This document shows, one piece after another, positions 3,770 to 36,618 of a stretch of 41,102 nucleotides of DNA (positions are counted from its first letter, which is position 1; the number at the start of each line of letters is the position of its first letter). The position numbers were made by a program, and so were the translations under genes. Source of the stretch: Octopus bimaculoides (lineage: Eukaryota); the NCBI RefSeq assembly GCF_001194135.2, contig NC_068982.1, forward strand, positions 78,290,323 to 78,331,424. The letters are read 5' to 3'. The notes beneath the pieces were generated by a model. That model ran no database searches, was not told the origin of the DNA, and was given only the letters and a program-made list of their open reading frames with translations.

Positions 3770-4140
3770 ATATGTGTATATATATATATGTGTATATATA
3801 TATATGTGTATATATATATGTATATATATATATGTATATATATATATGTATATATATGTGTATATATATGTATATATATATATATGTGTATATATATATA
3901 TACATATATATATATATGTATATATGTATATATATATATGTATATATATGTATATATATGTATGTATATATATGTATATGTATATATGTATATATATATA
4001 TATATACATATACATACACACGCACGTACACATACATATATATACATTCCTGCATACACATACACACATATATAGGTATATAGATATATATGTGTATGCA
4101 TTTACATATATGTATTTACATATCCGACTGTATATGTATG
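3770..4140. repeat. Interrupted (TA)n/(TG)/(CA) array
   Basis: Directly visible; adjoins gap. Confidence 0.95.
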
Positions 4141-8560: not shown

Positions 8561-9019
8561 GGAAGATTAAGATAAGGCATGAACTATACTGGTAAAGTTA
8601 AAAAGAAGAACAAACTGAGCTTCCTTTATCTACCAAGTTGGGCATTTTCTGTAACATTTAAAATGTTTTTCACCAAAGAAGTTCATTCTAACTGAGAAAA
8701 ACTTTGCTCAAAAAATTTATTTTCATGATTAGAGTACAGAATACTAAATTGTAACTGAATTTCACTCTGTACTTTGTAGTGTGTTGAACCTGAAGCAATT
8801 AGTGTGTGTGTGTGTCTGTTTATGGAAACAAATTTTCTGCAGTTGGATATCCTTTCTGTTTCCAACTTTCATGTATTTCCAAGCAAGGCAATACTTCCAT
8901 ATGGCCAGTTGTGCTTTCACAGAATATTGAAAATGAATGACACTGCTTGTATGACAGTGATATTAATTTCAACTATCATCCAATGTCAAGGCAAAGAGCA
9001 CATACACACTCACACATGT

Positions 9020-9170
9020 ATACGACAGATTTCATCCTTCTACCAAATTCAGTCACAAGATATTAGACCTGGGGTTATAATAGAAGATGTTTGCCCAAGG
9101 TACCACATAATAAAACTGAACCTGAACTACTTGGTTGCAAATCAAACTTCTTAAACGCATAGCCATGCAT
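9020..9170 (-). mobile_element. SINE family A in the inferred GPCR intron
   Basis: Reverse complement reads catggctatgcgtttaagaagtttg...ggttcagt...ggtaccttgggcaaacatcttctattataacc...gaatttggtagaagg. Confidence 0.65.
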
Positions 9171-9304
9171 GTTGTTTGTTTTGTTGTTGTTGTTGCTTCT
9201 GTAGAAATTATTGATTTTAATGTTGTTGCTGGCCTTGATCCAAATATTGTTACTGCTGTTGTTGCTGTTATTGTTATTTACCCAGAATTACATTATCATT
9301 TCAA

Positions 9305-9334
9305 CTGACATTCTCTCTTTCTTCTTTATTCCAG
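9305..9334 (+). promoter_or_regulatory. 3' splice acceptor (branch point + polypyrimidine tract + CAG) opening the GPCR exon
   Basis: CTGAC at 9305-9309, then ttctctctttcttctttattc and CAG ending at 9334, 78 nt upstream of the GPCR ATG. Confidence 0.7.
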
Positions 9335-9335
9335 A

Positions 9336-9362
9336 ATGCTGCACGTTTTGTCTCTCTGCTGA
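9336..9362 (+). other. Short upstream ORF (MLHVLSLC*) in the GPCR 5'UTR
   Basis: ATG at 9336, directly after the acceptor; TGA at 9360-9362. Confidence 0.5.
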
Positions 9363-9412
9363 CATTCCATTCTTGAAGTAAAACTTGATTTAACCTGCAG
9401 ACATCTGTAAAC

Positions 9413-10372
9413 ATGCTTGACCCTCGTGACAAGTTAATCCTCAACAGTCTGATCTCTTTGATCGGACTGGTGGGATTTATTGGCAACTTTCTCATCTTAC
9501 GGAGTCTCATAGTCTACAAAAACATGAGGATTGCACATCATGTTGTGATCGGAGGTTTAGCTCTTGCCAGCATCCTTTACATCCTCTTTGAGATTCCTCA
9601 GACAATTGTGAACTTCACAAGCACTCGTTGGAACATCACAGATATTTGGTGCAACATAACTAACTACATGGCACACTGCAGCCTCATTGTGGTTGCGTTT
9701 CATCTTGTTGTACTGTCTATTTTAAATGCCCTCATCCTCACTAACCGTCCTAATATGATTATTTCAGGCAAACATGCCTTGATAATTGTCGTCATTTTGT
9801 TTGTGGTCATTTTTACTGCTGGAGTACCGTTTGCATTTGCCTACCATGTGAATAAAGATTTGGAGCGATGTACTTTTAAACCAGACTTAAATGATGAATT
9901 CCTGCTACTCATCATCATAACTGTTTGTTATTTCTTACCCTTTGGTCTAGTTCTTATCACCCATATCATCCTCCATTACATAACACAGCGTTTCTTTGTC
10001 GATAGTATACCCGAAGACAAGCGCAAACTCTCCCAGTTAGTTTTAGGTCTTGTCATTGCTTATTTTTTCTGTCAGTTACCCTACCATGTTGTAAATATTC
10101 ACTTGCTTTATATGTTAAAAGATCCAAACATCCAGGCTGAGCAATTTATAATGTGGAATCGAATTTCTTCCTACTTGTTGTGTCTTGCTCAACTTAGTTT
10201 TTCCATTAGTCCCATCGTCTGTGCAAAACTTTCCAAAGATTTTGGCGATAGCTTCGACGAGATCATCAACTGCACAGCATGTGTCTCATCAGGGAACCAA
10301 AGACAAGGAACTCTCAATGCGTCCACTCCATTAACCTGCTCAACTTTAATTGGTTCTGAGAATAATGTATGA
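9413..10372 (+). CDS. Single-coding-exon class A (rhodopsin-like) 7TM GPCR, peptide-receptor-like (galanin/allatostatin-type scaffold), atypical motifs
   Basis: Intact 319-aa ORF in otherwise non-coding DNA. Seven hydrophobic segments; GN in TM1, P in TM2, WxxxxxWC ECL1/TM3 Cys, ECL2 Cys, YFLP in TM5, CxLP in TM6, P in TM7, helix-8-like SKDFGDSF, C-terminal Cys pair. In-frame TGA 27 nt upstream of the ATG. Confidence 0.93.
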   Translation: MLDPRDKLILNSLISLIGLVGFIGNFLILRSLIVYKNMRIAHHVVIGGLALASILYILFEIPQTIVNFTSTRWNITDIWCNITNYMAHCSLIVVAFHLVVLSILNALILTNRPNMIISGKHALIIVVILFVVIFTAGVPFAFAYHVNKDLERCTFKPDLNDEFLLLIIITVCYFLPFGLVLITHIILHYITQRFFVDSIPEDKRKLSQLVLGLVIAYFFCQLPYHVVNIHLLYMLKDPNIQAEQFIMWNRISSYLLCLAQLSFSISPIVCAKLSKDFGDSFDEIINCTACVSSGNQRQGTLNASTPLTCSTLIGSENNV

Positions 10373-10720
10373 GATGAGAAGAGCTCAATGTAAATAATTA
10401 ATATGAACTGTGTTGTGTATTTTGCTCAGAGAGCGAGAGAGAGACTGAGACTTATGGAATGGCACAAATGGCTTGGAACAGTGGAAGCTATTCAGAAAAA
10501 AAAAACAGTTTCTTCTTACTTAATGTTAGGAATGGAAAACAAAGGAGAAATATATTTTGATTTGGAAGAATTTATGATGAAGTTCCTGACAAAAATAGTC
10601 AAGATTTTTTTTTTACTTTTTATAAGAAAACAAAACTATCAGGGAGGGCAGGATACAATTTGAAAAAAATTGTATTTTAATAATCCATACAAAGTATACA
10701 CACACACATGCTTGCACATA

Positions 10721-10913
10721 TACAAGGTGTGGCTAAAAAAATTCCCAATTTCACCATTCTTCATAAAAGTTTCAACAGCAAACACAAAGTGTGCACCGGT
10801 CCAAATGATGAATGGTGACTAACAAATAAATGGTAAACCATTAGGTACATGAAGAAACCATTATCATCTACCTAACTTTAATAGTACCACAACAATAGTC
10901 GCCACACCCTGTA
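10721..10913. mobile_element. Tc1/mariner-type MITE, ~190 bp
   Basis: TA-caaggtgtggc at the left, gccacaccctg-TA at the right (TIR 10/11 match) with TA flanks. Confidence 0.6.
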
Positions 10914-11439
10914 CAATGTCAATTGAATTTTGAGTTTCAATATGTGTGAATACATGAATGTCAAGATGTGAATAATGTGTAAATATGTTGGAATATGTAC
11001 GTATGTATTTATGAAAAATGTATGTGTGAACTATATTATTGATACCTGTGAATGTATAAAAAAAAATAAAACATATATTTTTTTGAAGATGCCTGCTAAA
11101 ATGTGACTCTGTGTGTGTGTGTATGTGTGTGTGTGTGTGTGTGTGTGTAATAAAAGTTGTTGTCTTGGTTTTAATATTTATGACAGCCGCAGATTACATA
11201 AACATCCATGTACAACAAAGAGGAAGTTCAATGTTCCATTAGCGCCAAACATAATCCTAAAGTCCACATTATTTGGAATTGGACCTGAATTCTGTGTCAC
11301 TCAATACGGTAACAACAACAATAACAACAACAGAAATTACATGAGCTTAACCTTAAATTTGTTTCTGTAAAACAAACAAATATAGTTAAATATTTTTTTT
11401 TTTCAATTGAGTAATTGCAATCTTTGTGTGTCTTTGCAA

Positions 11440-11490
11440 ACATATATATGTATACATGTGAAAATATATACATGGACACATGTGTATATG

Positions 11491-11552
<62 letters not shown>

Positions 11553-11558
11553 GACATA

Positions 11559-11599
<41 letters not shown>

Positions 11600-11710
11600 C
11601 ATATATATATAAATACACACACACATTTCTGAATGTGTGTGTGTACACACATACATATATATACATTCACACACACACACACAAACATATATGTATATAT
11701 CATCATCATC
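11440..11710. repeat. (TA)n/(CA)n compound array
   Basis: Directly visible. Confidence 0.95.
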
Positions 11711-12145
11711 CATCATCCTTTTATGTCTGCTTTCCATGCCAGCATGAGTTAGAGTGGTCATCACCGTCCAAGTAATTTCTTAGTGAAATTGGTTCAGACT
11801 GGAACAAGCTGTCTAACCCATACTGGTATGGAAAGTGGACATTATATATATGTATATATACACATACACATGCATATACATATACCTATATACACATACA
11901 TATCTTTATATATCTTTACGTTTACCTCTCTCTATCTATCTATACATACTAATACACATCTACCATTTAATCCAAGTTCTGCTTCTTTTTGCAATGATTA
12001 GTGTGCATCACTGCATTCTGTGGTAAATGCAACACGCACACTTACACACACACATACACACAAATACTCTCCAAGTGTTTGTATATTCACTTGATTCACA
12101 TAAATTCCACAACAAATACATCATCATCATTGTCATTTTAACATT

Positions 12146-19898: not shown

Positions 19899-19935
<37 letters not shown>

Positions 19936-20020
19936 GCATGCATACATACATACATGCATGCATACATACATGCATGCATACATACATGCATGCATACATA
20001 CATACATACATACATACATA
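19890..20020. repeat. (TA)n followed by higher-order (CATG/CATA) repeat
   Basis: catgcatgcatacata units repeated. Confidence 0.9.
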
Positions 20021-20710
20021 ATGTGGTATTGAATTTAATTACAGAAACATTTTTTCACTCTACATGGATGAATATGATCTGCTTCTTTTTATTTATTTCT
20101 GCGGAAATGCATGCGCACCCACATGCAAGCACACATACACATACACACACATATTTACACACCAAAGCAATCATATATACATTGGAAAAAGACACGACTT
20201 TGACGGATGACATATATATATATATACAGATATATATATANNNNNNNNNNNNNNNNNNNNNNNNNNNNNNNNNNNNNNNNNNNNNNNNNNNNNNNNNNNN
20301 NNNNNNNNNNNNNNNNNNNNNNNNNNNNNNNNNNNNNNNNNNNNNNNNNNNNNNNNNNNNNNNNNNNNNNNNNNNNNNNNNNNNNNNNNNNNNNNNNNNN
20401 NNNNNNNNNNNNNNNNNNNNNNNNNNNNNNNNNNNNNNNNNNNNNNNNNNNNNNNNNNNNNNNNNNNNNNNNNNNNNNNNNNNNNNNNNNNNNNNNNNNN
20501 NNNNNNNNNNNNNNNNNNNNNNNNNNNNNNNNNNNNNNNNNNNNNNNNNNNNNNNNNNNNNNNNNNNNNNNNNNNNNNNNNNNNNNNNNNNNNNNNNNNN
20601 NNNNNNNNNNNNNNNNNNNNNNNNNNNNNNNNNNNNNNNNNNTATATATATATATATATATATTTATACATATATATATTTATACATATATATATTTATA
20701 CATATTTGTG

Positions 20711-22081: not shown

Positions 22082-23058
22082 TTTAAATAGGATTGACGTA
22101 ACTCTTCACGAAGAGGATTGACGTAACTCTTCACAAGACGAAGAGCGCGATTCGATTGTATAGATATTTTATTAGTCTGTCTTTCTCAAGTTCAAAATAA
22201 GAGGTGATTAAAAATTCAAAACTACAGAAATTTAAATGTAAAGTATGAACGAGAGCAACCAGCGTCCACACGTTGATGGAATGACATCATCAGTTTTTAA
22301 GTTTTATAACAGGCGGAAGGAAAGAAAAAAAGAAAAAAATAGAAAAAGGAAGACGACAGAAAAAAAAGGAAAGAAGAAGAGAGAAATAAGAATATTCAAT
22401 CAAACAGTTTTGTATAAATTTGATGATATTCTCCTGTCATCTTATTCATTCTTCCAGGGCGTGATGGTAATAACCCGCAAACATATTTCTCCTCATACAT
22501 TCTAAGAAGTGAAAGTGGAGTACATTCAGAATATTTTATGAGAATATGCTCTTTCAAGTATTCTTCAAAATTGCAGCCGTTTGAANNNNNNNNNNNNNNN
22601 NNNNNNNNNNNNNNNNNNNNNNNNNNNNNNNNNNNNNNNNNNNNNNNNNNNNNNNNNNNNNNNNNNNNNNNNNNNNNNNNNNNNNNNNNNNNNNNNNNNN
22701 NNNNNNNNNNNNNNNNNNNNNNNNNNNNNNNNNNNNNNNNNNNNNNNNNNNNNNNNNNNNNNNNNNNNNNNNNNNNNNNNNNNNNNNNNNNNNNNNNNNN
22801 NNNNNNNNNNNNNNNNNNNNNNNNNNNNNNNNNNNNNNNNNNNNNNNNNNNNNNNNNNNNNNNNNNNNNNNNNNNNNNNNNNNNNNNNNNNNNNNNNNNN
22901 NNNNNNNNNNNNNNNNNNNNNNNNNNNNNNNNNNNNNNNNNNNNNNNNNNNNNNNNNNNNNNNNNNNTGGCGTTTGTTAATTAAAGCCCCATTTTGGGGG
23001 TGATGCAAACCTTTTTGTTTTCAAATTTCTTCGAAAATTTGCTTCGAAGTAAACATTG

Positions 23059-23067
23059 AAGATGGCG
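23059..23067 (+). promoter_or_regulatory. YY1-like motif AAGATGGCG near the LINE 5' end
   Basis: Exact core match in a CpG-containing segment. Also reads ATGGCG... with a GTGAGT donor-like site about 19 nt later. Confidence 0.35.
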
Positions 23068-23162
23068 ACGAAAAGCAGGAGTGAGTAAGGAAGGTGGTGC
23101 AGCAATTTACACGAGGACTTCTCCATCATCCCCACCATGATTGGCAGTAGACAACAGGAAAC

Positions 23163-23175
23163 AAGGAAGAAGAAG

Positions 23176-23207
<32 letters not shown>

Positions 23208-23223
23208 GTAGCAGTAGTAGTAA

Positions 23224-23269
<46 letters not shown>

Positions 23270-23300
23270 CGTCATCGTGGTGGTGGTGGTGGTGGTGGTG
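23163..23300 (+). repeat. (GAA)n(GTA)n(GTG)n compound array inside the LINE 5' region
   Basis: Directly visible. Confidence 0.95.
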
Positions 23301-24675
23301 AATAGTCAAGAAAGAAGGCGAGAAGAAGGAAGGCGTAAAGTCTTCCTCACTACATGGAAATTGGAGTAGCACGAAGAACAACATTGAAAGCAACTGTTGC
23401 TACGAAGAGTCTAACAAAAAGGGAGTTAGCGGTGGGAAAGAGACTTTTGCAAATATCACTGCAGCTGAGGAATTGGTTAACATGTCATTGGAGAGCAAAA
23501 TAGAAAAACTAAACAAGACAGCAAAATATATGAAAATGAATGGAAGGGGGTCAGAATTGACGCCTCCAAGCGACGTGCTTGAAGCAACAGCGAAGCGGAC
23601 AGTTGTTTACAGGTGCGTGAAAACAAAGACAAGGAATCTTGAAAACGTTAAATACGATCAGATGGAAAGAGCTTTGAAAGACATATGGCAGGATATCCAC
23701 CACATTGCGAGAGCGATGCAGTACGGCGGAGTAGATGTCCTTTTAAGACCGAGGGGCAGGCGATACAGAGCTCAGTGACCACGCGTCGCACCGAAGAAAT
23801 CGCCTTCTTCCCATCGTACATGGGAAGAAGGCCAGTACGGATTGCAGTACCAGCTGTTTCACCAGACCTGGATTTATGGTGGATTCTCGTCTGTATTCGT
23901 ACGGACGGAGGAGAGAATCTCCTGAATATTAAAAGATCGAAATGGGAGAATTGAGATGGGACTATCTTGGAGGTTCTTCTCTACGTGAAACCAAAGCAGT
24001 TAGAGAAAGTCCCAGACTTGATTTCTCACTCGAACGTGATGAACGTGGAGATCAGAAGGCCGAGGTGCCACGATTGTGGTTCAAAGAGCCACTTTCGCTT
24101 TTTCTACCCACAGAACCAGAAGAGAAGCGCAAAAAGAAATGTCCAAACGAAAGTACCACAACCCATGAGTCGACAAAATCAAGAAGAAGAAGAACAACAA
24201 CAACAACAGAGAGGCAGGGGAATAGAAACAGAAATTGAACCCAAGGAGACAAAACAGGCAGTGGAGACAAAAAGGTGGCAGTGGAAGTAGCACAAGCAGT
24301 AATGGCGGAAGCTACAGTAGCAGGAGCAACAACAACAACAACTACAAGAGAACCAGAACAAATAACACCAGAAGAAAACATACAAGACACGGACTCCTCC
24401 ACGCATCAAAGTGATGATGAAGGGGAAGCCCAAAAGGCAAAAAGAAAAAAAAAACATGAAAGAGACACAGAAAAAGGGAGAAGTCCAAGAAACGGCAAAC
24501 ACAGATACATTAATGACAACACCAACACTACAAGCATCACGCTCACCAACACCATCACAAACACCCACAACAGAATGAAAAACACAATAAACTTTAAAAA
24601 GAAAAATGTTACTACAACAACAACAACAACAACAACCATCGGCGCAGCAGCGGGATTTCGTGCTAGTGAGACAAG

Positions 24676-26317
24676 GTGGATCATCACTATCTGGTGTCTG
24701 TCCTAAAAGCTGTCGGTTTCGGTCCCGTCTTCAGAGGCTGGATCACTACAATATATAGTGACATCTGCTCGGTTGTCAAATTAAATGGTCACCCCTCGGA
24801 ACTTTTCAGTATTGAAGATTCGGTACTCCAAGGATACTCCCTGTTTTTATATATTTTAACTTTAGAACCCTTGCTGCGAAGGATGGAGAATTGGAGGGGT
24901 ATCCCGTTGGAACTAAGTCACAGGAGAGCTGTGTCTGCATACGCGGACGGCGTCACTGTCATGGTGTCGGACTCTTCGCACATAGAAAAGATTGACACCA
25001 TACTGGAAGAATATCAGGAATGCACAGGAGCACTCATAAACCAAGACAAGTCAGTAGATCTAAAACTAGGCTCTTGGAGAGGCAAGTCGACTAGCAGCGA
25101 TTTCTGTCGCTGGACGGAGGATCCGGTGAAAGTGTTAGGAGTCTGGTTCGGACCAGATCTCCTGGCAGATAAGAACTGGGAAGAGGTTATGACTAGGGTG
25201 GCCAAGCTCACCCAGAAATGGGCAGAAAGGAAGCTGTCTCTGAAAGGACGGATGGAAGTAGTGAATGCATATATCGCCTTAGTAGTGCACTACTGCCTAG
25301 CCGTCGTGCCTTATCCTAAGAAAACTCTGACCAGATTGGAATGCTTGTTTTTCGTATAGAAGGGTCAGGTTCCGCTGATCAGAAAATCCATCTGCAGTTA
25401 ACACCCACACCGTGGTGGTCTTGGGATGCCTTCCTTAATGATGTGGCGCCACGCTATGAGGCTGTCGCACCTACAGAATTATTTAAATCACTGCGATGAT
25501 GTGGACGACGACGACGACGAAAATAAGAGTGAACTGGTGTGGGCGTCTTTCATGCGACACGTCTTTTCGCAGCTCATCTCATTGACAGAACTGCAGTCAT
25601 GTGTCAAACGTAGACCCAGGTTGGGTGTTTGGCATCTAGAATGTTGTCAGATGCTCACTGTATTGTACCAACTGCACAAAACCGATAGTGGGAAAACAAC
25701 TCGAGATTTCTATAGGGGATTAGTTGAGGATATGAGTGATGATGGTCTAGCATTGAATCTAGGCATCGACAAGAAGTTTGAGCAGTCTCTTCCAGAGGAC
25801 CTTCGGTTCAAAGATCATGGACAATTTCCAAAAGTCTTTGGCTCGGCGGTGTTACAGAAGGGCATTGTCCATCTGAGACAAGCTCTTCAAGCATGGAAGT
25901 GCCAACAGCCGAACCTGCTCGAGATACTTGCAGAGGGACGAAACTATCTTGCATACAATGATTCCATGTCCGTGCATTAGAGAGTTGTGAGATTGTGTGG
26001 AGCAGCTGTTGTCGCGTGTAAGATGAATTCAGCTGTCTGCTGAGTACATTGTGAAGATCGACGCACCACCTTCCATTAGCAGAGAAAGAAGGCAGGTCTT
26101 TTTCTGCTTAGTGGCTGTGGCAAAAGAGGCTGGGTGGTGGACCCGTCTGAAAGGTTTGAAGACAGGCACATTCCTATCTGGTCAAGCCCTCATCAATTTC
26201 TTCAAGTATCATTTGAAGAGGAAGGTGAGGATAGAGAGAGAGGTGTCGCCTTCTAGTGTGTTTATCAAAGGTAGTCGACAGTGGCAAGACTGGCGAGACT
26301 GTATGGATCTATTCTGA
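24676..26317 (+). pseudogene. L1/Tx1 ORF2 remnant (RT domains 3-7 and C-terminus), frameshifted
   Basis: ORFs 24676-25359, 25426-25980 and 26051-26317 in changing frames. Confidence 0.85.
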
Positions 26318-26623
26318 ATATGTTTTTCTAAGCAGGAGGAAAGAAACTAGAAGAGGGCACTTTCTCATGCGTTGAACATGGAAGAGTAAGCCAAGTTTTT
26401 TGTGAAGGGTTTACCCCAGATTACCCTAAATGGACTGCCCCGCTATTAGGGATTCTATTATTTATTTATTTCTCTACCTTCTATTACATATCTTCTGTTA
26501 TAGCTTTTAATTTGGTAGTATCTCCCCTTAATTGATGTTAACTCTACATGCTTTTGTGCTGTAACTCATCCTTCGATATTGTCCTCCATGTTTTGGGCCC
26601 CTGTGGCCAATAAAAGAAATCAG

Positions 26624-26692
<69 letters not shown>

Positions 26693-26693
26693 C

Positions 26694-26906
26694 AAGATGG
26701 TGAGCTGGCAGAATCATTAGCATGCCAGGCAAAATGCTTAGTGGCATTTCATCCCTCATTACGTTTTGAGTTCAAATTCTGCCGAGGTCAACTTTGCCTT
26801 TCATCCTTCGGGGTCAATAAAATGAGTACTAGACAAATACTGGGGTCGTTGTGATCGACTTTACCCCTTCCCCCAAATTTCAGGACTTGTGCCTTTAGTA
26901 GAAAGG
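26694..26906 (+). mobile_element. SINE family B, full length, in (ATT)n
   Basis: gatggtgagctggcagaatc A box, gagttcaaattc B box, gcctttcatccttcggggtcaataaaatgagtac domain, ATT tail. Confidence 0.9.
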
Positions 26907-26952
26907 ATTATTATTATTATTATTATTATTACTACTACTACTATTATTATTA

Positions 26953-27010
<58 letters not shown>

Positions 27011-32729: not shown

Positions 32730-33281
32730 GCCTTGATGCACTACCAGGCAGTGGCTCTCATGGCTTCTGATCTTAATTGATTGGAAGTGTTGTCATGTAC
32801 ATATTTTGTTTTGGTATAAAAGATGGGCTACAGAAAATATTCTGCTCAATACCACAGATTTGCTTGTCACTTGTTTGACCTTAACCAGTTGAGCATGTCC
32901 CTTGGTGGCTGACGATATGTGCATCTCTGATCACGAGCATAAGTAGTAGGGGAGCATCATAGTCATGTGTTGAGAGGAATTCTTTGGGGTTTGAATAATT
33001 CACCTTTGGAAACATGGGTGTTTCGCTCACATCCTTAAACAAACCTTATTCAGGAACCTTTTGAGCGGGATGGGCTACTCGACCTGAAGAAAATTCTAGC
33101 TGGGCCCCACCTGCGAGGTCATGCGCTTTTTATTTTGATATGAGATCACCATGTTGCGCACATATTGTTGTGATGCTTGTGCCTGGTGTACCCTTATCAG
33201 ACGGGTAGTCATGATGGGTATAATGGGCTTCGTATATTTTACCCCAGTGTCACTTTGGTGGTATGCACCGCTCTCTCACTC
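32728..33281 (+). mobile_element. ~555-bp family C element, copy 3
   Basis: (AAT)n on both sides. Confidence 0.92.
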
Positions 33282-34385
<1,104 letters not shown>

Positions 34386-35703: not shown

Positions 35704-36618
35704 TGGCAAGAAAAGCCCCTACATGGTAAATACTGGGCTAAACTAAATGCGAAAGAAATAGACAGAGAAAAATCCCAGCAATGGCTGAGAAGCTCAGGAC
35801 TCAAAGCAGAGACTGAAGGATTTTTAATTGCTGCACAAGACCAAAGCCTCCCCACCAGAAATTACCAAAAACACATAATGAAAAGAAATATAACAAGTAA
35901 CTGTAGAATATGTGGAGATCGACAAGAAACAATAAATCATATTATCTCTGGCTGCCCAGTCCTGGCTAAGAAGGAATATATCCACAGACACGACAGAGCT
36001 GGGACCTATATACACTGGAAGCTATGCCAACNNNNNNNNNNNNNNNNNNNNNNNNNNNNNNNNNNNNNNNNNNNNNNNNNNNNNNNNNNNNNNNNNNNNN
36101 NNNNNNNNNNNNNNNNNNNNNNNNNNNNNNNNNNNNNNNNNNNNNNNNNNNNNNNNNNNNNNNNNNNNNNNNNNNNNNNNNNNNNNNNNNNNNNNNNNNN
36201 NNNNNNNNNNNNNNNNNNNNNNNNNNNNNNNNNNNNNNNNNNNNNNNNNNNNNNNNNNNNNNNNNNNNNNNNNNNNNNNNNNNNNNNNNNNNNNNNNNNN
36301 NNNNNNNNNNNNNNNNNNNNNNNNNNNNNNNNNNNNNNNNNNNNNNNNNNNNNNNNNNNNNNNNNNNNNNNNCTATCATAGTAGGTGCCTTAGGTATAAT
36401 AAAAAAATATTCAGACAAATACATAACAAAAATAACAGGACTTACAAATATATATAACATACAGAAAATTGCACTACTGGGTACTGCACACATCCTACGC
36501 AAAACACTTTCAATACAGTAAACATAAGAGCACCACAGCAAACCACAGCACATACCCAAGGCGCACAGAGCTGCGCTCGGTAGTGAAGTGAAAGCACGTT
36601 ATAAAAATAAAACTACTG
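35704..36618 (+). mobile_element. R4/Dong-like LINE 3' fragment (copy 8), apparently young
   Basis: Stop-free WQEKPLHGKY..WLRSSGLKAETEGFLIAAQDQSLPTRNY..CRICGDRQETINHIISGC..RHDRAGTYIHWKLCQ, gap, IIVGALG..QKIALLGTAHILRKTLSIQ*. (AAT)n at both ends. Confidence 0.93.

What the first reader, a model, noticed from the sequence alone, without database searches (positions are those of the whole stretch)
9413..10372. GPCR with all activation microswitches replaced but the fold conserved
Seen: D2.50 becomes S (LALAS), DRY becomes LNA (SILNA), W4.50 becomes F, Y5.58 becomes H, CWxP becomes CQLP, and NPxxY becomes SPIVC. Meanwhile G-N1.50, the TM2/4/5/6/7 prolines, the TM3-ECL2 disulfide Cys pair and helix 8 are kept, with no stop or frameshift. 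The N-terminus is only about 7 residues and the N-glycosylation sequons lie in ECL1. Residue numbering is from manual alignment. Known: these motifs drive G-protein coupling in class A receptors, and atypical chemokine receptors with altered DRY act as scavengers. Inference: a selected, non-canonical receptor (decoy, scavenger, heterodimer partner or unusual signalling) rather than a decaying pseudogene.
Basis: partly seen in the sequence, partly recalled or inferred. Interest (0 to 1): 0.75.

Follow-up and report, generated by a model that had tools for sequence, protein, structure and literature searches.

The report
Conserved cephalopod receptor without activation switches
This is an intact, strongly conserved cephalopod gene for a seven-helix receptor that belongs to an unstudied mollusc-wide receptor family and has replaced every residue normally needed to switch on G proteins, so it probably works by another route.

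Summary
ORF 9413-10372 (+) encodes a 319-aa class A 7TM protein (Pfam 7tm_1 E=8e-19; AlphaFold2 7TM plus helix 8). It carries S2.50, L-N-A for DRY, F4.50, H5.58, CQLP and SPIVC. It has 0 of 8 canonical residues; 117 of the 119 nearest non-family homologues have at least 5.

It is not a pseudogene. Five cephalopod orthologues share the same start and stop. dN/dS is 0.035-0.08. In one relative a spliced cDNA contig joins a 5' exon exactly at the acceptor that is conserved in the window (AG 9333-9334).

New context: it is the cephalopod orthologue of a roughly single-copy orphan family found in chitons, gastropods and bivalves. Databases give members a different name almost every time. That family already lacks D3.49, Y3.51, W6.48 and N7.49 but keeps D2.50, R3.50, Y5.58, F6.44, D7.45, R7.49 and Y7.53. 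Cephalopods changed all seven. They kept the structural residues and the most conserved parts, which are the intracellular loops, helix 8 and a TPLTCST tail.

Best reading (inferred): a functional receptor that no longer activates G proteins and acts through its conserved intracellular face, with arrestin or a scaffold as partner. The ligand and partner are untested.

The parts
9413..10372 (+). Complete single-exon coding sequence (319 codons plus TGA stop) of an atypical class A 7TM receptor
   Evidence: ORF list. Pfam 7tm_1 E=8e-19. Orthologues share the same start and stop. dN/dS 0.035-0.08.
9310..9334 (+). Polypyrimidine tract and AG splice acceptor (AG at 9333-9334). The coding exon starts at 9335, so there is at least one upstream non-coding exon, which was not located.
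   Evidence: Sequence. The CAG|RATG junction is conserved in all cephalopod loci. In a relative, cDNA contig L009 diverges from genomic contigs L006 and L008 exactly at this junction.
9336..9362 (+). Short upstream ORF (MLHVLSLC*) beginning one base after the acceptor, out of frame with the main ATG
   Evidence: A uATG at the same place, followed by a 2-9 codon uORF, is present in all six cephalopod sequences.
9569..9571 (+). S53 at position 2.50, where the family and class A consensus is D
9611..9661 (+). Three N-glycosylation sequons (N67-F-T, N74-I-T, N81-I-T) around ECL1. They are conserved in cephalopod orthologues and absent in other molluscs.
9650..9652 (+). C80 (3.25), one half of the TM3-ECL2 disulfide pair
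   Evidence: Invariant in 22 family members
9722..9730 (+). L104-N105-A106 in place of D-R-Y. R3.50 is N; the family consensus is hydrophobic-R-G/A/C.
9737..9751 (+). ICL2 motif L109-T-N-R112-P, with L109 and R112 invariant across the family
   Evidence: invariant columns. ICL2 is 77% invariant among cephalopods.
9800..9802 (+). F130 at 4.50, where the consensus is W
9869..9871 (+). C153 in the ECL2 hairpin, the disulfide partner of C80
   Evidence: Invariant. Hairpin at 144-155 in the model.
9962..9964 (+). H184 at 5.58. It is Y in the other cephalopods and in 16 of 18 other molluscs, so the change is specific to the argonaut lineage.
9989..10036 (+). Conserved cytoplasmic TM5-ICL3-TM6 motif QRFFVDSIPEDKRKLSQ. 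It includes invariant S198 and S207, the basophilic site R204-K-L-S207, and K203 at 6.30 (E in 15 of 18 other molluscs).
   Evidence: (80% invariant among cephalopods)
10061..10081 (+). Y217 at 6.44 (family F) and C220-Q221-L222-P223 in place of CWxP
10196..10222 (+). TM7 core: S262 (7.45, family D), S266 (7.49, family R, class A N), P267 kept, C270 (7.53, family and class A Y)
10232..10282 (+). Helix 8 with the family signature FG.SFDEIINCT.C (N286 and C287 invariant, C290 nearly so)
   Evidence: Helix 275-289 in the model. Conservation.
10325..10345 (+). C-tail motif T305-P-L-T308-C-S-T311. P306 and L307 are nearly invariant in the family. The spacing fits a PxxPxxP phosphorylation code.
   Evidence: The link to arrestin binding is an inference from general knowledge.

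Best explanation
The ORF is the functional cephalopod orthologue of a roughly single-copy, mollusc-wide orphan family of class A seven-helix receptors.

Shown:
- The gene is intact, under strong purifying selection, and transcribed and spliced in a relative.
- On the cephalopod stem, every conserved polar or aromatic switch residue of the family was replaced: D2.50, R3.50, F6.44, D7.45, R7.49 and Y7.53, plus Y5.58 in the argonaut lineage.
- The structural residues were kept: N1.50, the disulfide pair and five helix prolines.
- The intracellular loops, helix 8 and a Ser/Thr tail motif are the best conserved parts of the protein.

Inferred:
- Without R3.50, Y5.58, Y7.53 and the 2.50/7.45/7.49 polar pocket, the receptor no longer activates heterotrimeric G proteins in the canonical way.
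- It still binds something at the cell surface. The pocket-forming helices, the ECL2 hairpin and the ECL1 glycosylation sites are conserved.
- It acts through its conserved cytoplasmic face: phosphorylation at R-K-L-S207 and T305/T308/T311, then arrestin or another scaffold, giving arrestin-type signalling and/or ligand internalisation.
- The charged cluster D2.50/D7.45/R7.49 of the other molluscs, probably an internal salt bridge filling the sodium pocket, was neutralised as a set to Ser/Ser/Ser(Gly). This points to a coordinated rebuild, not decay.
For: - Homology and fold.
- Zero of 8 canonical residues, against at least 5 in 117 of 119 nearest non-family homologues.
- Orthologues and family: (23 clusters at E<1e-30, then a gap down to generic class A). 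The NJ tree follows mollusc class taxonomy.
- Selection: dN/dS 0.035-0.08; ORF 95.6% identical against flanks at 79-84%.
- Transcription and splicing.
- Of 36 positions at least 85% conserved in 18 non-cephalopod members (excluding Met1), 13 changed in cephalopods, and these include all 7 switch positions; all structural positions were kept. The hypergeometric probability is about 2e-4, calculated by hand from those counts.
- Intracellular regions are the most invariant: ICL1 0.83, ICL2 0.77, ICL3 0.80 and H8 0.82, against ECL1 0.50, ECL2 0.44 and ECL3 0.00.
- Tail phospho-code and basophilic site.
- Precedent that natural 7TM receptors can lack G-protein coupling yet recruit arrestins (ACKR2/D6R, C5aR2): PMC7612807.
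Against: - No functional data of any kind exist. Loss of G-protein coupling is predicted from residue identity only.
- The intracellular face is conserved between cephalopods and molluscs that still have R3.50, Y5.58 and Y7.53. That could mean the same partner, possibly a G protein, is still used.
- The phospho-code and kinase-site matches are short motifs that occur by chance.
- The switch replacements represent a single evolutionary event on one branch, so the 'coordinated' pattern has n=1.
- Expression was shown in a relative, not in the window's own species.
- The AlphaFold2 model is only moderate (pLDDT 70) and its coordinates could not be inspected, so residue contacts were not checked.
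Confidence: 0.5

Rival explanations
1. It is still an ordinary G-protein-coupled (probably peptide) receptor that activates G proteins through a lineage-specific, non-canonical set of core residues.
For: - ICL2, ICL3 and helix 8 motifs are shared with family members that retain R3.50, Y5.58, Y7.53 and E6.30. This suggests an unchanged intracellular partner.
- Its nearest relatives by sequence and fold are G-protein-coupled peptide receptors.
- The ECL2 hairpin is typical of peptide receptors.
Against: - R3.50 is present in 118 of 119 nearest homologues and Y7.53 in 111 of 119.
- By established class A knowledge these residues contact or organise the G-alpha binding cavity, and their mutation usually abolishes coupling.
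- Here seven such positions changed together.
Confidence: 0.25
2. It has a ligand-independent role: a 7TM subunit that serves as chaperone, co-receptor or heterodimer partner for another membrane protein.
For: - The N-terminus is very short.
- The activation core is lost while the fold and cytoplasmic motifs are strictly conserved.
- No canonical close paralogue was found in cephalopods that could share a ligand.
Against: - TM2, TM3 and TM7, which line the orthosteric pocket, are 69-86% invariant.
- The ECL2 hairpin, disulfide pair and ECL1 sequons are conserved in cephalopods, which fits a maintained extracellular binding site.
- No partner is known.
Confidence: 0.15
3. It is a decaying or recently dead pseudogene whose ORF is open by chance.
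For: Loss of all activation motifs is what one might expect of a relaxed gene. No expression data exist for the window's own species.
Against: - dN/dS is 0.035-0.08 over synonymous divergences of 0.15 to more than 1.
- The ORF has identical boundaries in six sequences from at least five taxa.
- The derived residues themselves are fixed across cephalopods.
- A spliced transcript exists in a relative.
Confidence: 0.02
4. It is a member of the lineage-specific, rapidly evolving chemosensory class A GPCR expansions of lophotrochozoans.
For: The CDS is intronless, the N-terminus is short, and there is a faint Pfam Srsx chemoreceptor hit (E=0.0023, below cut-off).
Against: - The gene is about single-copy per species and its tree mirrors taxonomy.
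- There is no tandem paralogue within +-10 kb in two relatives or within the 41 kb window.
- It evolves slowly.
- The described expansions keep DRY and NPxxY and have fast-evolving pockets (PMC11886862).
Confidence: 0.05

Closest known systems
Arrestin-coupled, G-protein-silent class A receptors: ACKR2/D6R and other atypical chemokine receptors, and C5aR2 (PMC7612807)
   Same: - Class A fold with an altered DRY region.
- Predicted lack of G-protein activation.
- Ser/Thr-bearing C-tail.
- Maintained by selection rather than decaying.
   Different: - No specific homology to chemokine or complement receptors.
- Those receptors keep most other switches (D2.50, NPxxY), whereas here all are replaced.
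- They coexist with canonical paralogues that share their ligands; no such paralogue was found in cephalopods.
- Arrestin recruitment here is untested.
Galanin / allatostatin-A type peptide receptors (best solved-structure hit is human GalR1, 7wq3/7xjj)
   Same: - Best sequence match among solved structures: E=3e-12 for the protein and 5e-31 for the family profile.
- The nearest non-family proteins look like AstA/galanin-type receptors.
- P2.59, the ECL2 hairpin and helix 8 are shared.
   Different: - Only about 20% identity.
- There is a clear E-value gap between the family (down to 1e-41) and everything else (1e-29 and weaker).
- NTSR1, ETB, opioid, NPY and apelin receptors score almost as well as GalR1.
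- The DRY, CWxP and NPxxY motifs of those receptors are absent. It is the nearest outgroup, not an orthologue.
The mollusc-wide orphan family it belongs to, e.g. Lottia gigantea XP_009044045.1, Patella vulgata XP_050400354.1, Mizuhopecten yessoensis XP_021360522.1, Crassostrea virginica XP_022333105, Magallana gigas XP_011444989, Liolophura sinensis XP_064608835.1, Mya arenaria 'somatostatin receptor type 5-like'
   Same: - Shared family-specific motifs: invariant L109 and R112 in ICL2, RFFxDS...RxLS in ICL3/TM6, CxLP, helix 8 FDEIINCTxC, and the tail TPLT.
- Short acidic N-terminus.
- About one copy per species.
   Different: - Non-cephalopod members keep D2.50, R3.50, Y5.58, E6.30 (15 of 18), F6.44, D7.45, R7.49 and Y7.53; cephalopods have S, N, Y/H, K, Y, S, S/G and C.
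- Cephalopods also gained three ECL1 sequons and an even shorter N-terminus.
Non-signalling opsin relatives of cephalopods (retinochrome / RGR type). This comparison is recalled from general knowledge.
   Same: A 7TM class A protein in cephalopods that has left canonical G-protein signalling yet is conserved.
   Different: There is no retinal-binding Lys at 7.43 (Q260 here) and no specific similarity to opsins in any search.

Membership tests
Class A (rhodopsin-like) 7TM receptors, Pfam PF00001 | Significant match to the family profile over all seven helices | tested here: met
   7tm_1 E=8.1e-19, 68.5 bits against a cut-off of 30.5, residues 24-268 on profile positions 1-258 of 260
Class A (rhodopsin-like) 7TM receptors, Pfam PF00001 | Seven-helix fold with helix 8 and a TM3-ECL2 disulfide pair | tested here: met
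   AlphaFold2 pTM 0.70 with 7 helices plus H8. Foldseek TM-scores 0.70-0.79 to many class A structures. C80 and C153 are invariant.
Class A (rhodopsin-like) 7TM receptors, Pfam PF00001 | Structural hallmark residues N1.50, P5.50, P6.50 and P7.50 | tested here: met
   N25, P176, P223 and P267
Canonical G-protein-activating class A receptor (a functional class, not a homology family) | Activation microswitches D2.50, E/DRY (R3.50), Y5.58, CWxP (W6.48) and NPxxY (N7.49, Y7.53) | tested here: not met
   The residues are S53, L104-N105-A106, H184, Q221, S266 and C270, giving 0 of 8 canonical residues against at least 5 in 117 of 119 homologues
Canonical G-protein-activating class A receptor (a functional class, not a homology family) | Agonist-dependent G-protein activation | not testable with these tools
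   Needs cell-based assays
Galanin / allatostatin-A receptor family | Orthology: clustering with galanin/AstA receptors to the exclusion of other peptide receptors | tested here: not met
   The family is separated from all other proteins by an E-value gap (1e-41 against 1e-29). In PDB profile hits, GalR1, NTSR1, ETB, CCR6, NPY1R and APJ all fall within a few orders of magnitude. Automatic names differ for almost every member.
Atypical chemokine receptor / C5aR2-type arrestin-coupled 7TMRs | Altered DRY region | tested here: met
   L-N-A at 3.49-3.51
Atypical chemokine receptor / C5aR2-type arrestin-coupled 7TMRs | Homology to chemokine or complement receptors, and a canonical paralogue sharing the ligand | tested here: not met
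   There is no specific affinity to chemokine receptors. No close paralogue was found in cephalopods.
Atypical chemokine receptor / C5aR2-type arrestin-coupled 7TMRs | Arrestin recruitment or ligand scavenging without G-protein activation | not testable with these tools
   Only indirect hints: the conserved TPLTCST tail and RKLS site
Mollusc-wide orphan family defined in this report | Family-specific motifs: L109/R112 in ICL2, RFFxDS..RxLS, CxLP, FDEIINCTxC in helix 8, and the TPL tail | tested here: met
   Invariant or nearly invariant columns in the 22-sequence alignment. Profile E-values run from 1e-168 to 1e-41 for members.
Mollusc-wide orphan family defined in this report | Family core D2.50 / R3.50 / D7.45 / R7.49-P-x-x-Y7.53 | tested here: not met
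   All are replaced in the four cephalopod sequences of the family alignment. Membership rests on orthology; the core is a derived loss.
Opsins / retinochrome | Schiff-base lysine at 7.43 | tested here: not met
   Q260 lies six residues before S266 (7.49), read from the sequence
Lophotrochozoan lineage-specific chemosensory class A expansions (PMC11886862) | Many lineage-specific paralogues, rapid evolution of the pocket, and DRY/NPxxY retained | tested here: not met
   The gene is single-copy with a tree that mirrors taxonomy. dN/dS is at most 0.08. The motifs are absent.

The most novel reading that the evidence does not exclude
A natural, selection-maintained rebuild of a class A receptor core. 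In other molluscs a buried charged cluster (D2.50/D7.45/R7.49, an 'RPxxY' family with an arginine where sodium normally sits) and R3.50/E6.30 are present. In cephalopods both were neutralised as sets. The result is a 7TM protein that has left G-protein signalling altogether and works only through a cytoplasmic partner (arrestin, kinase or scaffold) conserved since the mollusc ancestor. Unlike the ACKRs and C5aR2, it would be the sole orthologue and not a decoy copy of a canonical receptor.
Probability: 0.3. Interest if true: 0.65.

Novelty: new variant of a known kind. Interest (0 to 1): 0.5.

Why it matters
Nearly everything known about class A receptor activation rests on a handful of conserved switch residues. 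Natural receptors that lack some of them (ACKRs, C5aR2) have been key to understanding arrestin-biased signalling.

Here a single-copy gene has replaced all of them and remains under dN/dS of about 0.05. Its orthologues in bivalves, gastropods and chitons still keep most of the residues. This gives a ready-made evolutionary before-and-after pair for asking what a 7TM fold does without its G-protein machinery, and which intracellular motifs are enough for function.

It also flags an unnamed, mollusc-wide orphan family with an unusual R7.49 (RPxxY). Databases currently label its members with about a dozen unrelated receptor names.

Tried and rejected
- **Pseudogene:** rejected by dN/dS, conserved ORF boundaries and a spliced transcript.
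- **Galanin/AstA/GPR151 orthology:** rejected. It is only the nearest outgroup, with an E-value gap and many peptide receptors scoring alike.
- **Opsin-like photoisomerase:** rejected because there is no K7.43.
- **Chemosensory lineage-specific expansion:** rejected. The gene is single-copy and slow-evolving, and the described expansions keep DRY and NPxxY.
- **Locating the upstream 5' exon in the window:** similarity searches with the relatives' first exons gave only chance-level hits.
- **Showing expression in the window's own lineage:** contigs L001-L003 are colinear with the genome through the intron acceptor, so they are DNA or unspliced RNA and uninformative. Apparent poly(A) ends of L011 and L012 are an internal A-run.
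- **Identifying species behind the unnamed orthologues (P0001, P0003-5, P0009):** run-accession searches in the literature found nothing. It therefore stays open whether the ~70% orthologues are octopods or squids, and whether Nautilus has the ancestral or derived core. P0009, which I suspected was Nautilus, groups with pteriomorph bivalves.
- **Literature search by protein accession:** no paper mentions family members in its main text.
- **Second word-index search with the family alignment:** it added only more oyster members.
- **First bootstrap tree script:** it timed out and was replaced. Deep nodes of that NJ tree are poorly supported.
- **R3.50/E6.30 'ionic lock' co-loss:** suggestive only. 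K/R at 6.30 is the common state in the nearest peptide receptors.
Full report
**1. What is in the sequence**

The window is draft eukaryotic DNA. It is AT-rich, full of microsatellites and N gaps, and carries LINE reverse-transcriptase fragments. The only long gene-like ORF is 9413..10372 on the + strand, 319 codons with no interruption.

- It matches Pfam 7tm_1 over all seven helices: E=8.1e-19, 68.5 bits against a cut-off of 30.5.
- AlphaFold2, run with an 8-sequence alignment, gives a seven-helix bundle, an ECL2 beta-hairpin and helix 8 at 275-289. Mean pLDDT is 69.9 and pTM 0.70; the last 40 residues are disordered.
- Foldseek finds class A peptide receptors (ETB, NTSR1, orexin, opioid) at TM-scores of 0.70-0.79.

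**2. The observation**

HMMER alignment to human GalR1 and direct indexing confirm each claim.

- Kept: N25 (1.50), P62 (2.59), C80 (3.25), P139 (4.59), C153 (ECL2), P176 (5.50), P223 (6.50), P267 (7.50) and helix 8.
- Replaced: S53 at 2.50, L104-N105-A106 for DRY, F130 at 4.50, H184 at 5.58, C-Q-L-P for CWxP, and S266-P-I-V-C270 for NPxxY.
- The N-terminus before TM1 is about 3-7 residues.
- Sequons sit at N67, N74 and N81 around ECL1.

As a chance control I aligned the 119 nearest non-family class A homologues from the exhaustive search.

| Residue | Present in (of 119) |
|---|---|
| D2.50 | 116 |
| R3.50 | 118 |
| W4.50 | 116 |
| W6.48 | 103 |
| N7.49 | 116 |
| Y7.53 | 111 |

Of these homologues, 117 of 119 carry at least 5 of 8 canonical residues. 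This protein carries none.

**3. Not a pseudogene**

The word-index search found five cephalopod clusters:
- P0001, 99% identical, from sequencing runs of a close relative.
- P0002, 89%, Argonauta hians, labelled 'neuropeptide CCHamide-2 receptor-like'.
- P0003, P0004 and P0005, 68-70%, from other cephalopods of unknown species.

All share the same start. After correcting a TGA read-through artefact in P0004, all share the same stop after ...SEN(N/I)V.

Nei-Gojobori dN/dS values:

| Comparison | dN/dS | Note |
|---|---|---|
| Window vs closest relative | 0.035 | 30 synonymous, 4 non-synonymous differences; dS 0.155 |
| Window vs A. hians | 0.051 | dS 1.29 |
| Among the other three | 0.056-0.079 | |

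Against the closest relative, nucleotide identity is 95.6% across the ORF and drops to 84% downstream and 79% upstream. Against A. hians, only the ORF and about 58 upstream bases align at all.

**4. Gene structure and expression**

A polypyrimidine tract and an AG at 9333-9334 lie 78 nt upstream of the ATG. The junction CAG|RATG is conserved in all cephalopod loci.

In the species that encodes P0003, two genomic contigs (L006, L008) carry the polypyrimidine-CAG. A third contig (L009) is 100% identical downstream and completely different upstream of exactly that point. L009 is therefore a spliced cDNA. The orthologue is transcribed, and a non-coding 5' exon is spliced onto the coding exon. The L010-L013 contigs of a third species look the same and share a CCGGACAAA element with L009's first exon.

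I could not locate the upstream exon in the window. I have no expression evidence for the window's own species.

**5. What family it belongs to**

An exhaustive profile search of 1.84 billion representatives gave 23 clusters at E<1e-30 (575 to about 157 bits). After a gap came thousands of generic class A receptors from 1e-29 downward.

Every member with a name is a mollusc:
- Chiton: Liolophura.
- Gastropods: Patella, Lottia, Nucella, Plakobranchus.
- Bivalves: Mya, Tegillarca, Mizuhopecten, Ylistrum, Crassostrea, Magallana, Saccostrea, Ostrea.

Their automatic names are all different: galanin receptor 2b, atypical chemokine receptor 4-like, B2 bradykinin, NPBW1-like, CCR6, CXCR2, PAR2-like, P2Y14-like and somatostatin receptor 5-like. 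This is the signature of an orphan with no characterised close relative.

No paper in the searchable library mentions six of the accessions. A neighbour-joining tree recovers gastropods (96.5%), pteriomorph bivalves (100%), the Mya group (100%) and cephalopods (100%) as clades. This fits roughly one orthologue per species. The deep nodes are unresolved.

The family profile hits GalR1 best among solved structures (5e-31). NTSR1, ETB, CCR6, NPY1R and APJ follow closely. Galanin/AstA-type receptors are therefore the nearest outgroup, not orthologues.

**6. Ancestral versus derived states**

This comes from the 22-sequence alignment.

| Feature | Family consensus | Cephalopods |
|---|---|---|
| 1.50 | N | N (kept) |
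| 2.50 | D | S |
| 3.49-3.51 | hydrophobic-R-G/A/C | L-N-A (R3.50 -> N) |
| ICL2 | invariant LTxR | kept |
| 4.50 | W, or F/Y | F |
| 5.58 | Y | Y; H in the argonaut lineage |
| 6.30 | E in 15 of 18, within R-E-R-R-L-S-R | K |
| 6.44 | F | Y |
| 6.47-6.50 | C-x(Q/R/K/H)-L-P | C-Q-L-P |
| 7.45 | D | S |
| 7.49-7.53 | R-P-x-x-Y | S/G-P-x-x-C |
| Helix 8 | FDEIINCTxC | kept |
| Tail | TPLT | kept |

D3.49, Y3.51, W6.48 and N7.49 were therefore already gone in the mollusc ancestor. The family has an unusual arginine at 7.49 next to two aspartates (2.50 and 7.45).

Among 36 positions at least 85% conserved in the 18 non-cephalopod members (excluding Met1), 13 changed in cephalopods. These 13 include all seven polar or aromatic switch positions. 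N1.50, both cysteines and all the prolines were kept. If the 13 changes fell at random among the 36 positions, the hypergeometric probability of hitting all seven is about 2e-4 (hand calculation). The switch list was fixed from general GPCR knowledge. The changes are one event on one branch, so this describes a pattern and does not prove selection for it.

**7. Where constraint lies**

Fraction of invariant positions among six cephalopod sequences:

| Region | Fraction invariant |
|---|---|
| ICL1 | 0.83 |
| ICL2 | 0.77 |
| TM5-ICL3-TM6 cytoplasmic segment | 0.80 |
| Helix 8 | 0.82 |
| TM2 | 0.86 |
| ECL1 | 0.50 |
| ECL2 | 0.44 |
| ECL3 | 0.00 |
| TM5 | 0.25 |

ICL3, helix 8 and ICL2 are also the most conserved regions among the other molluscs. 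The cytoplasmic face carries an invariant serine in a basophilic context (R204-K-L-S207; RRLS in most members). The tail motif T305-P-L-T308-C-S-T311 is invariant in cephalopods and fits the PxxPxxP spacing of arrestin phosphorylation codes. The link to arrestin is general knowledge, not a test done here.

**8. Mechanism**

Shown: an intact, expressed and strongly constrained 7TM receptor gene whose activation core was replaced while its structural skeleton and cytoplasmic motifs were retained.

Inferred:
- R3.50, Y5.58 and Y7.53 organise the G-alpha pocket, and the 2.50/7.45/7.49 cluster transmits activation. Without them, canonical G-protein activation is unlikely.
- The conserved cytoplasmic motifs imply a conserved intracellular partner. 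Arrestin, kinase or scaffold coupling, with signalling and/or ligand internalisation, is the best guess by analogy with ACKR2 and C5aR2. Those receptors recruit arrestins without activating G proteins (PMC7612807).
- I put about 0.5 on this.

Rivals:
- Non-canonical but real G-protein coupling (0.25). The shared intracellular face argues for it.
- A ligand-independent partner or chaperone role (0.15).
- A chemosensory expansion member (0.05). The described lophotrochozoan expansions keep DRY and NPxxY and evolve fast (PMC11886862).
- A pseudogene (0.02).

**9. Comparison and novelty**

By homology it is a class A receptor. By function it most resembles the arrestin-coupled 'atypical' receptors, but it is not related to them. 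It has lost far more of the core than they have. As far as the searches show, it is the sole orthologue in cephalopods and not a decoy copy beside a canonical paralogue.

Canonical cephalopod peptide receptors, such as the Octopus AstC receptors, keep DRY, WLP and NPxxY.

I rate it a new variant of a known kind, with interest about 0.5. The concept of atypical receptors is familiar and there are no functional data here. However, the family is undescribed, the RPxxY/D-D-R core is unusual, and the cephalopod versus other-mollusc pair is a clean natural experiment.

**10. Limits**

- The species of the window and of four orthologues is unknown. The timing of the loss (coleoid stem, or later) and the state in Nautilus remain open.
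- dS is saturated for the deepest cephalopod comparisons.
- The structure model is moderate and its coordinates could not be inspected.
- Everything about ligand and partner is inference.

Noticed in passing
window 9336-9362 (+); the same position in L001, L004, L005, L006 and L010: An upstream ATG lies one base after the splice acceptor and opens a very short uORF (8 codons here, 2-9 in relatives). It is present in all six cephalopod sequences, which suggests conserved translational control of the receptor.
   Followed up: partly
window 9395-9400 (+): A second possible acceptor (aacctgcag|ac) lies 13 nt before the ATG. It would stay in frame with the ORF (TSVN-M...). It is not conserved in Argonauta hians, so it is probably not used.
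   Followed up: partly
L005 10955-11011 (protein P0004): The 336-aa database protein P0004 has an 18-residue C-terminal extension. It exists only because the source's gene caller read TGA as Trp. The real product stops at ...SENIV like the others.
   Followed up: yes
window 24676-25359 (+) and 35878-36030 (+); GC-rich block about 23000-27000: These are fragments of a non-LTR retrotransposon: RVT_1 at E=2.7e-5 (below the Pfam cut-off) and zf-RVT at E=5.6e-5. They coincide with the only GC-rich stretch of the window (0.43-0.46 against about 0.30).
   Followed up: partly
window 33230-33510: A very long trinucleotide repeat reads as poly-N, poly-T, poly-L or poly-V in different frames. Many TG/TA/CA microsatellites (for example 3770-4100, 11110-11760, 19900-20100) and numerous N gaps make most of the window unassemblable noise around the single gene.
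   Followed up: no
Family members in public databases (P0006, P0010-P0013, P0018-P0021, P0025, P0196, P0197): Orthologues of one orphan family carry about ten unrelated automatic names, from galanin receptor 2b through CCR6, CXCR2, ACKR4-like, PAR2-like, P2Y14-like and NPBW1-like to SSTR5-like and CCHamide-2 receptor-like. This is a trap for anyone counting 'chemokine' or 'galanin' receptors in molluscs.
   Followed up: yes
L001-L003 (runs SRR11869385/390/391) against window 9016-11147: Contigs from a close relative or divergent haplotype are 95.6% identical in the ORF but only 79-84% in the flanks, with dS 0.155. The window's species and these runs are therefore not the same population.
   Followed up: partly
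Family alignment A2, C-termini: Most family members, including all cephalopods (-NNV or -NIV), end in a hydrophobic residue (V/I/L/M/F), often preceded by an acidic residue. This could be a PDZ-type ligand, but the pattern is loose.
   Followed up: no
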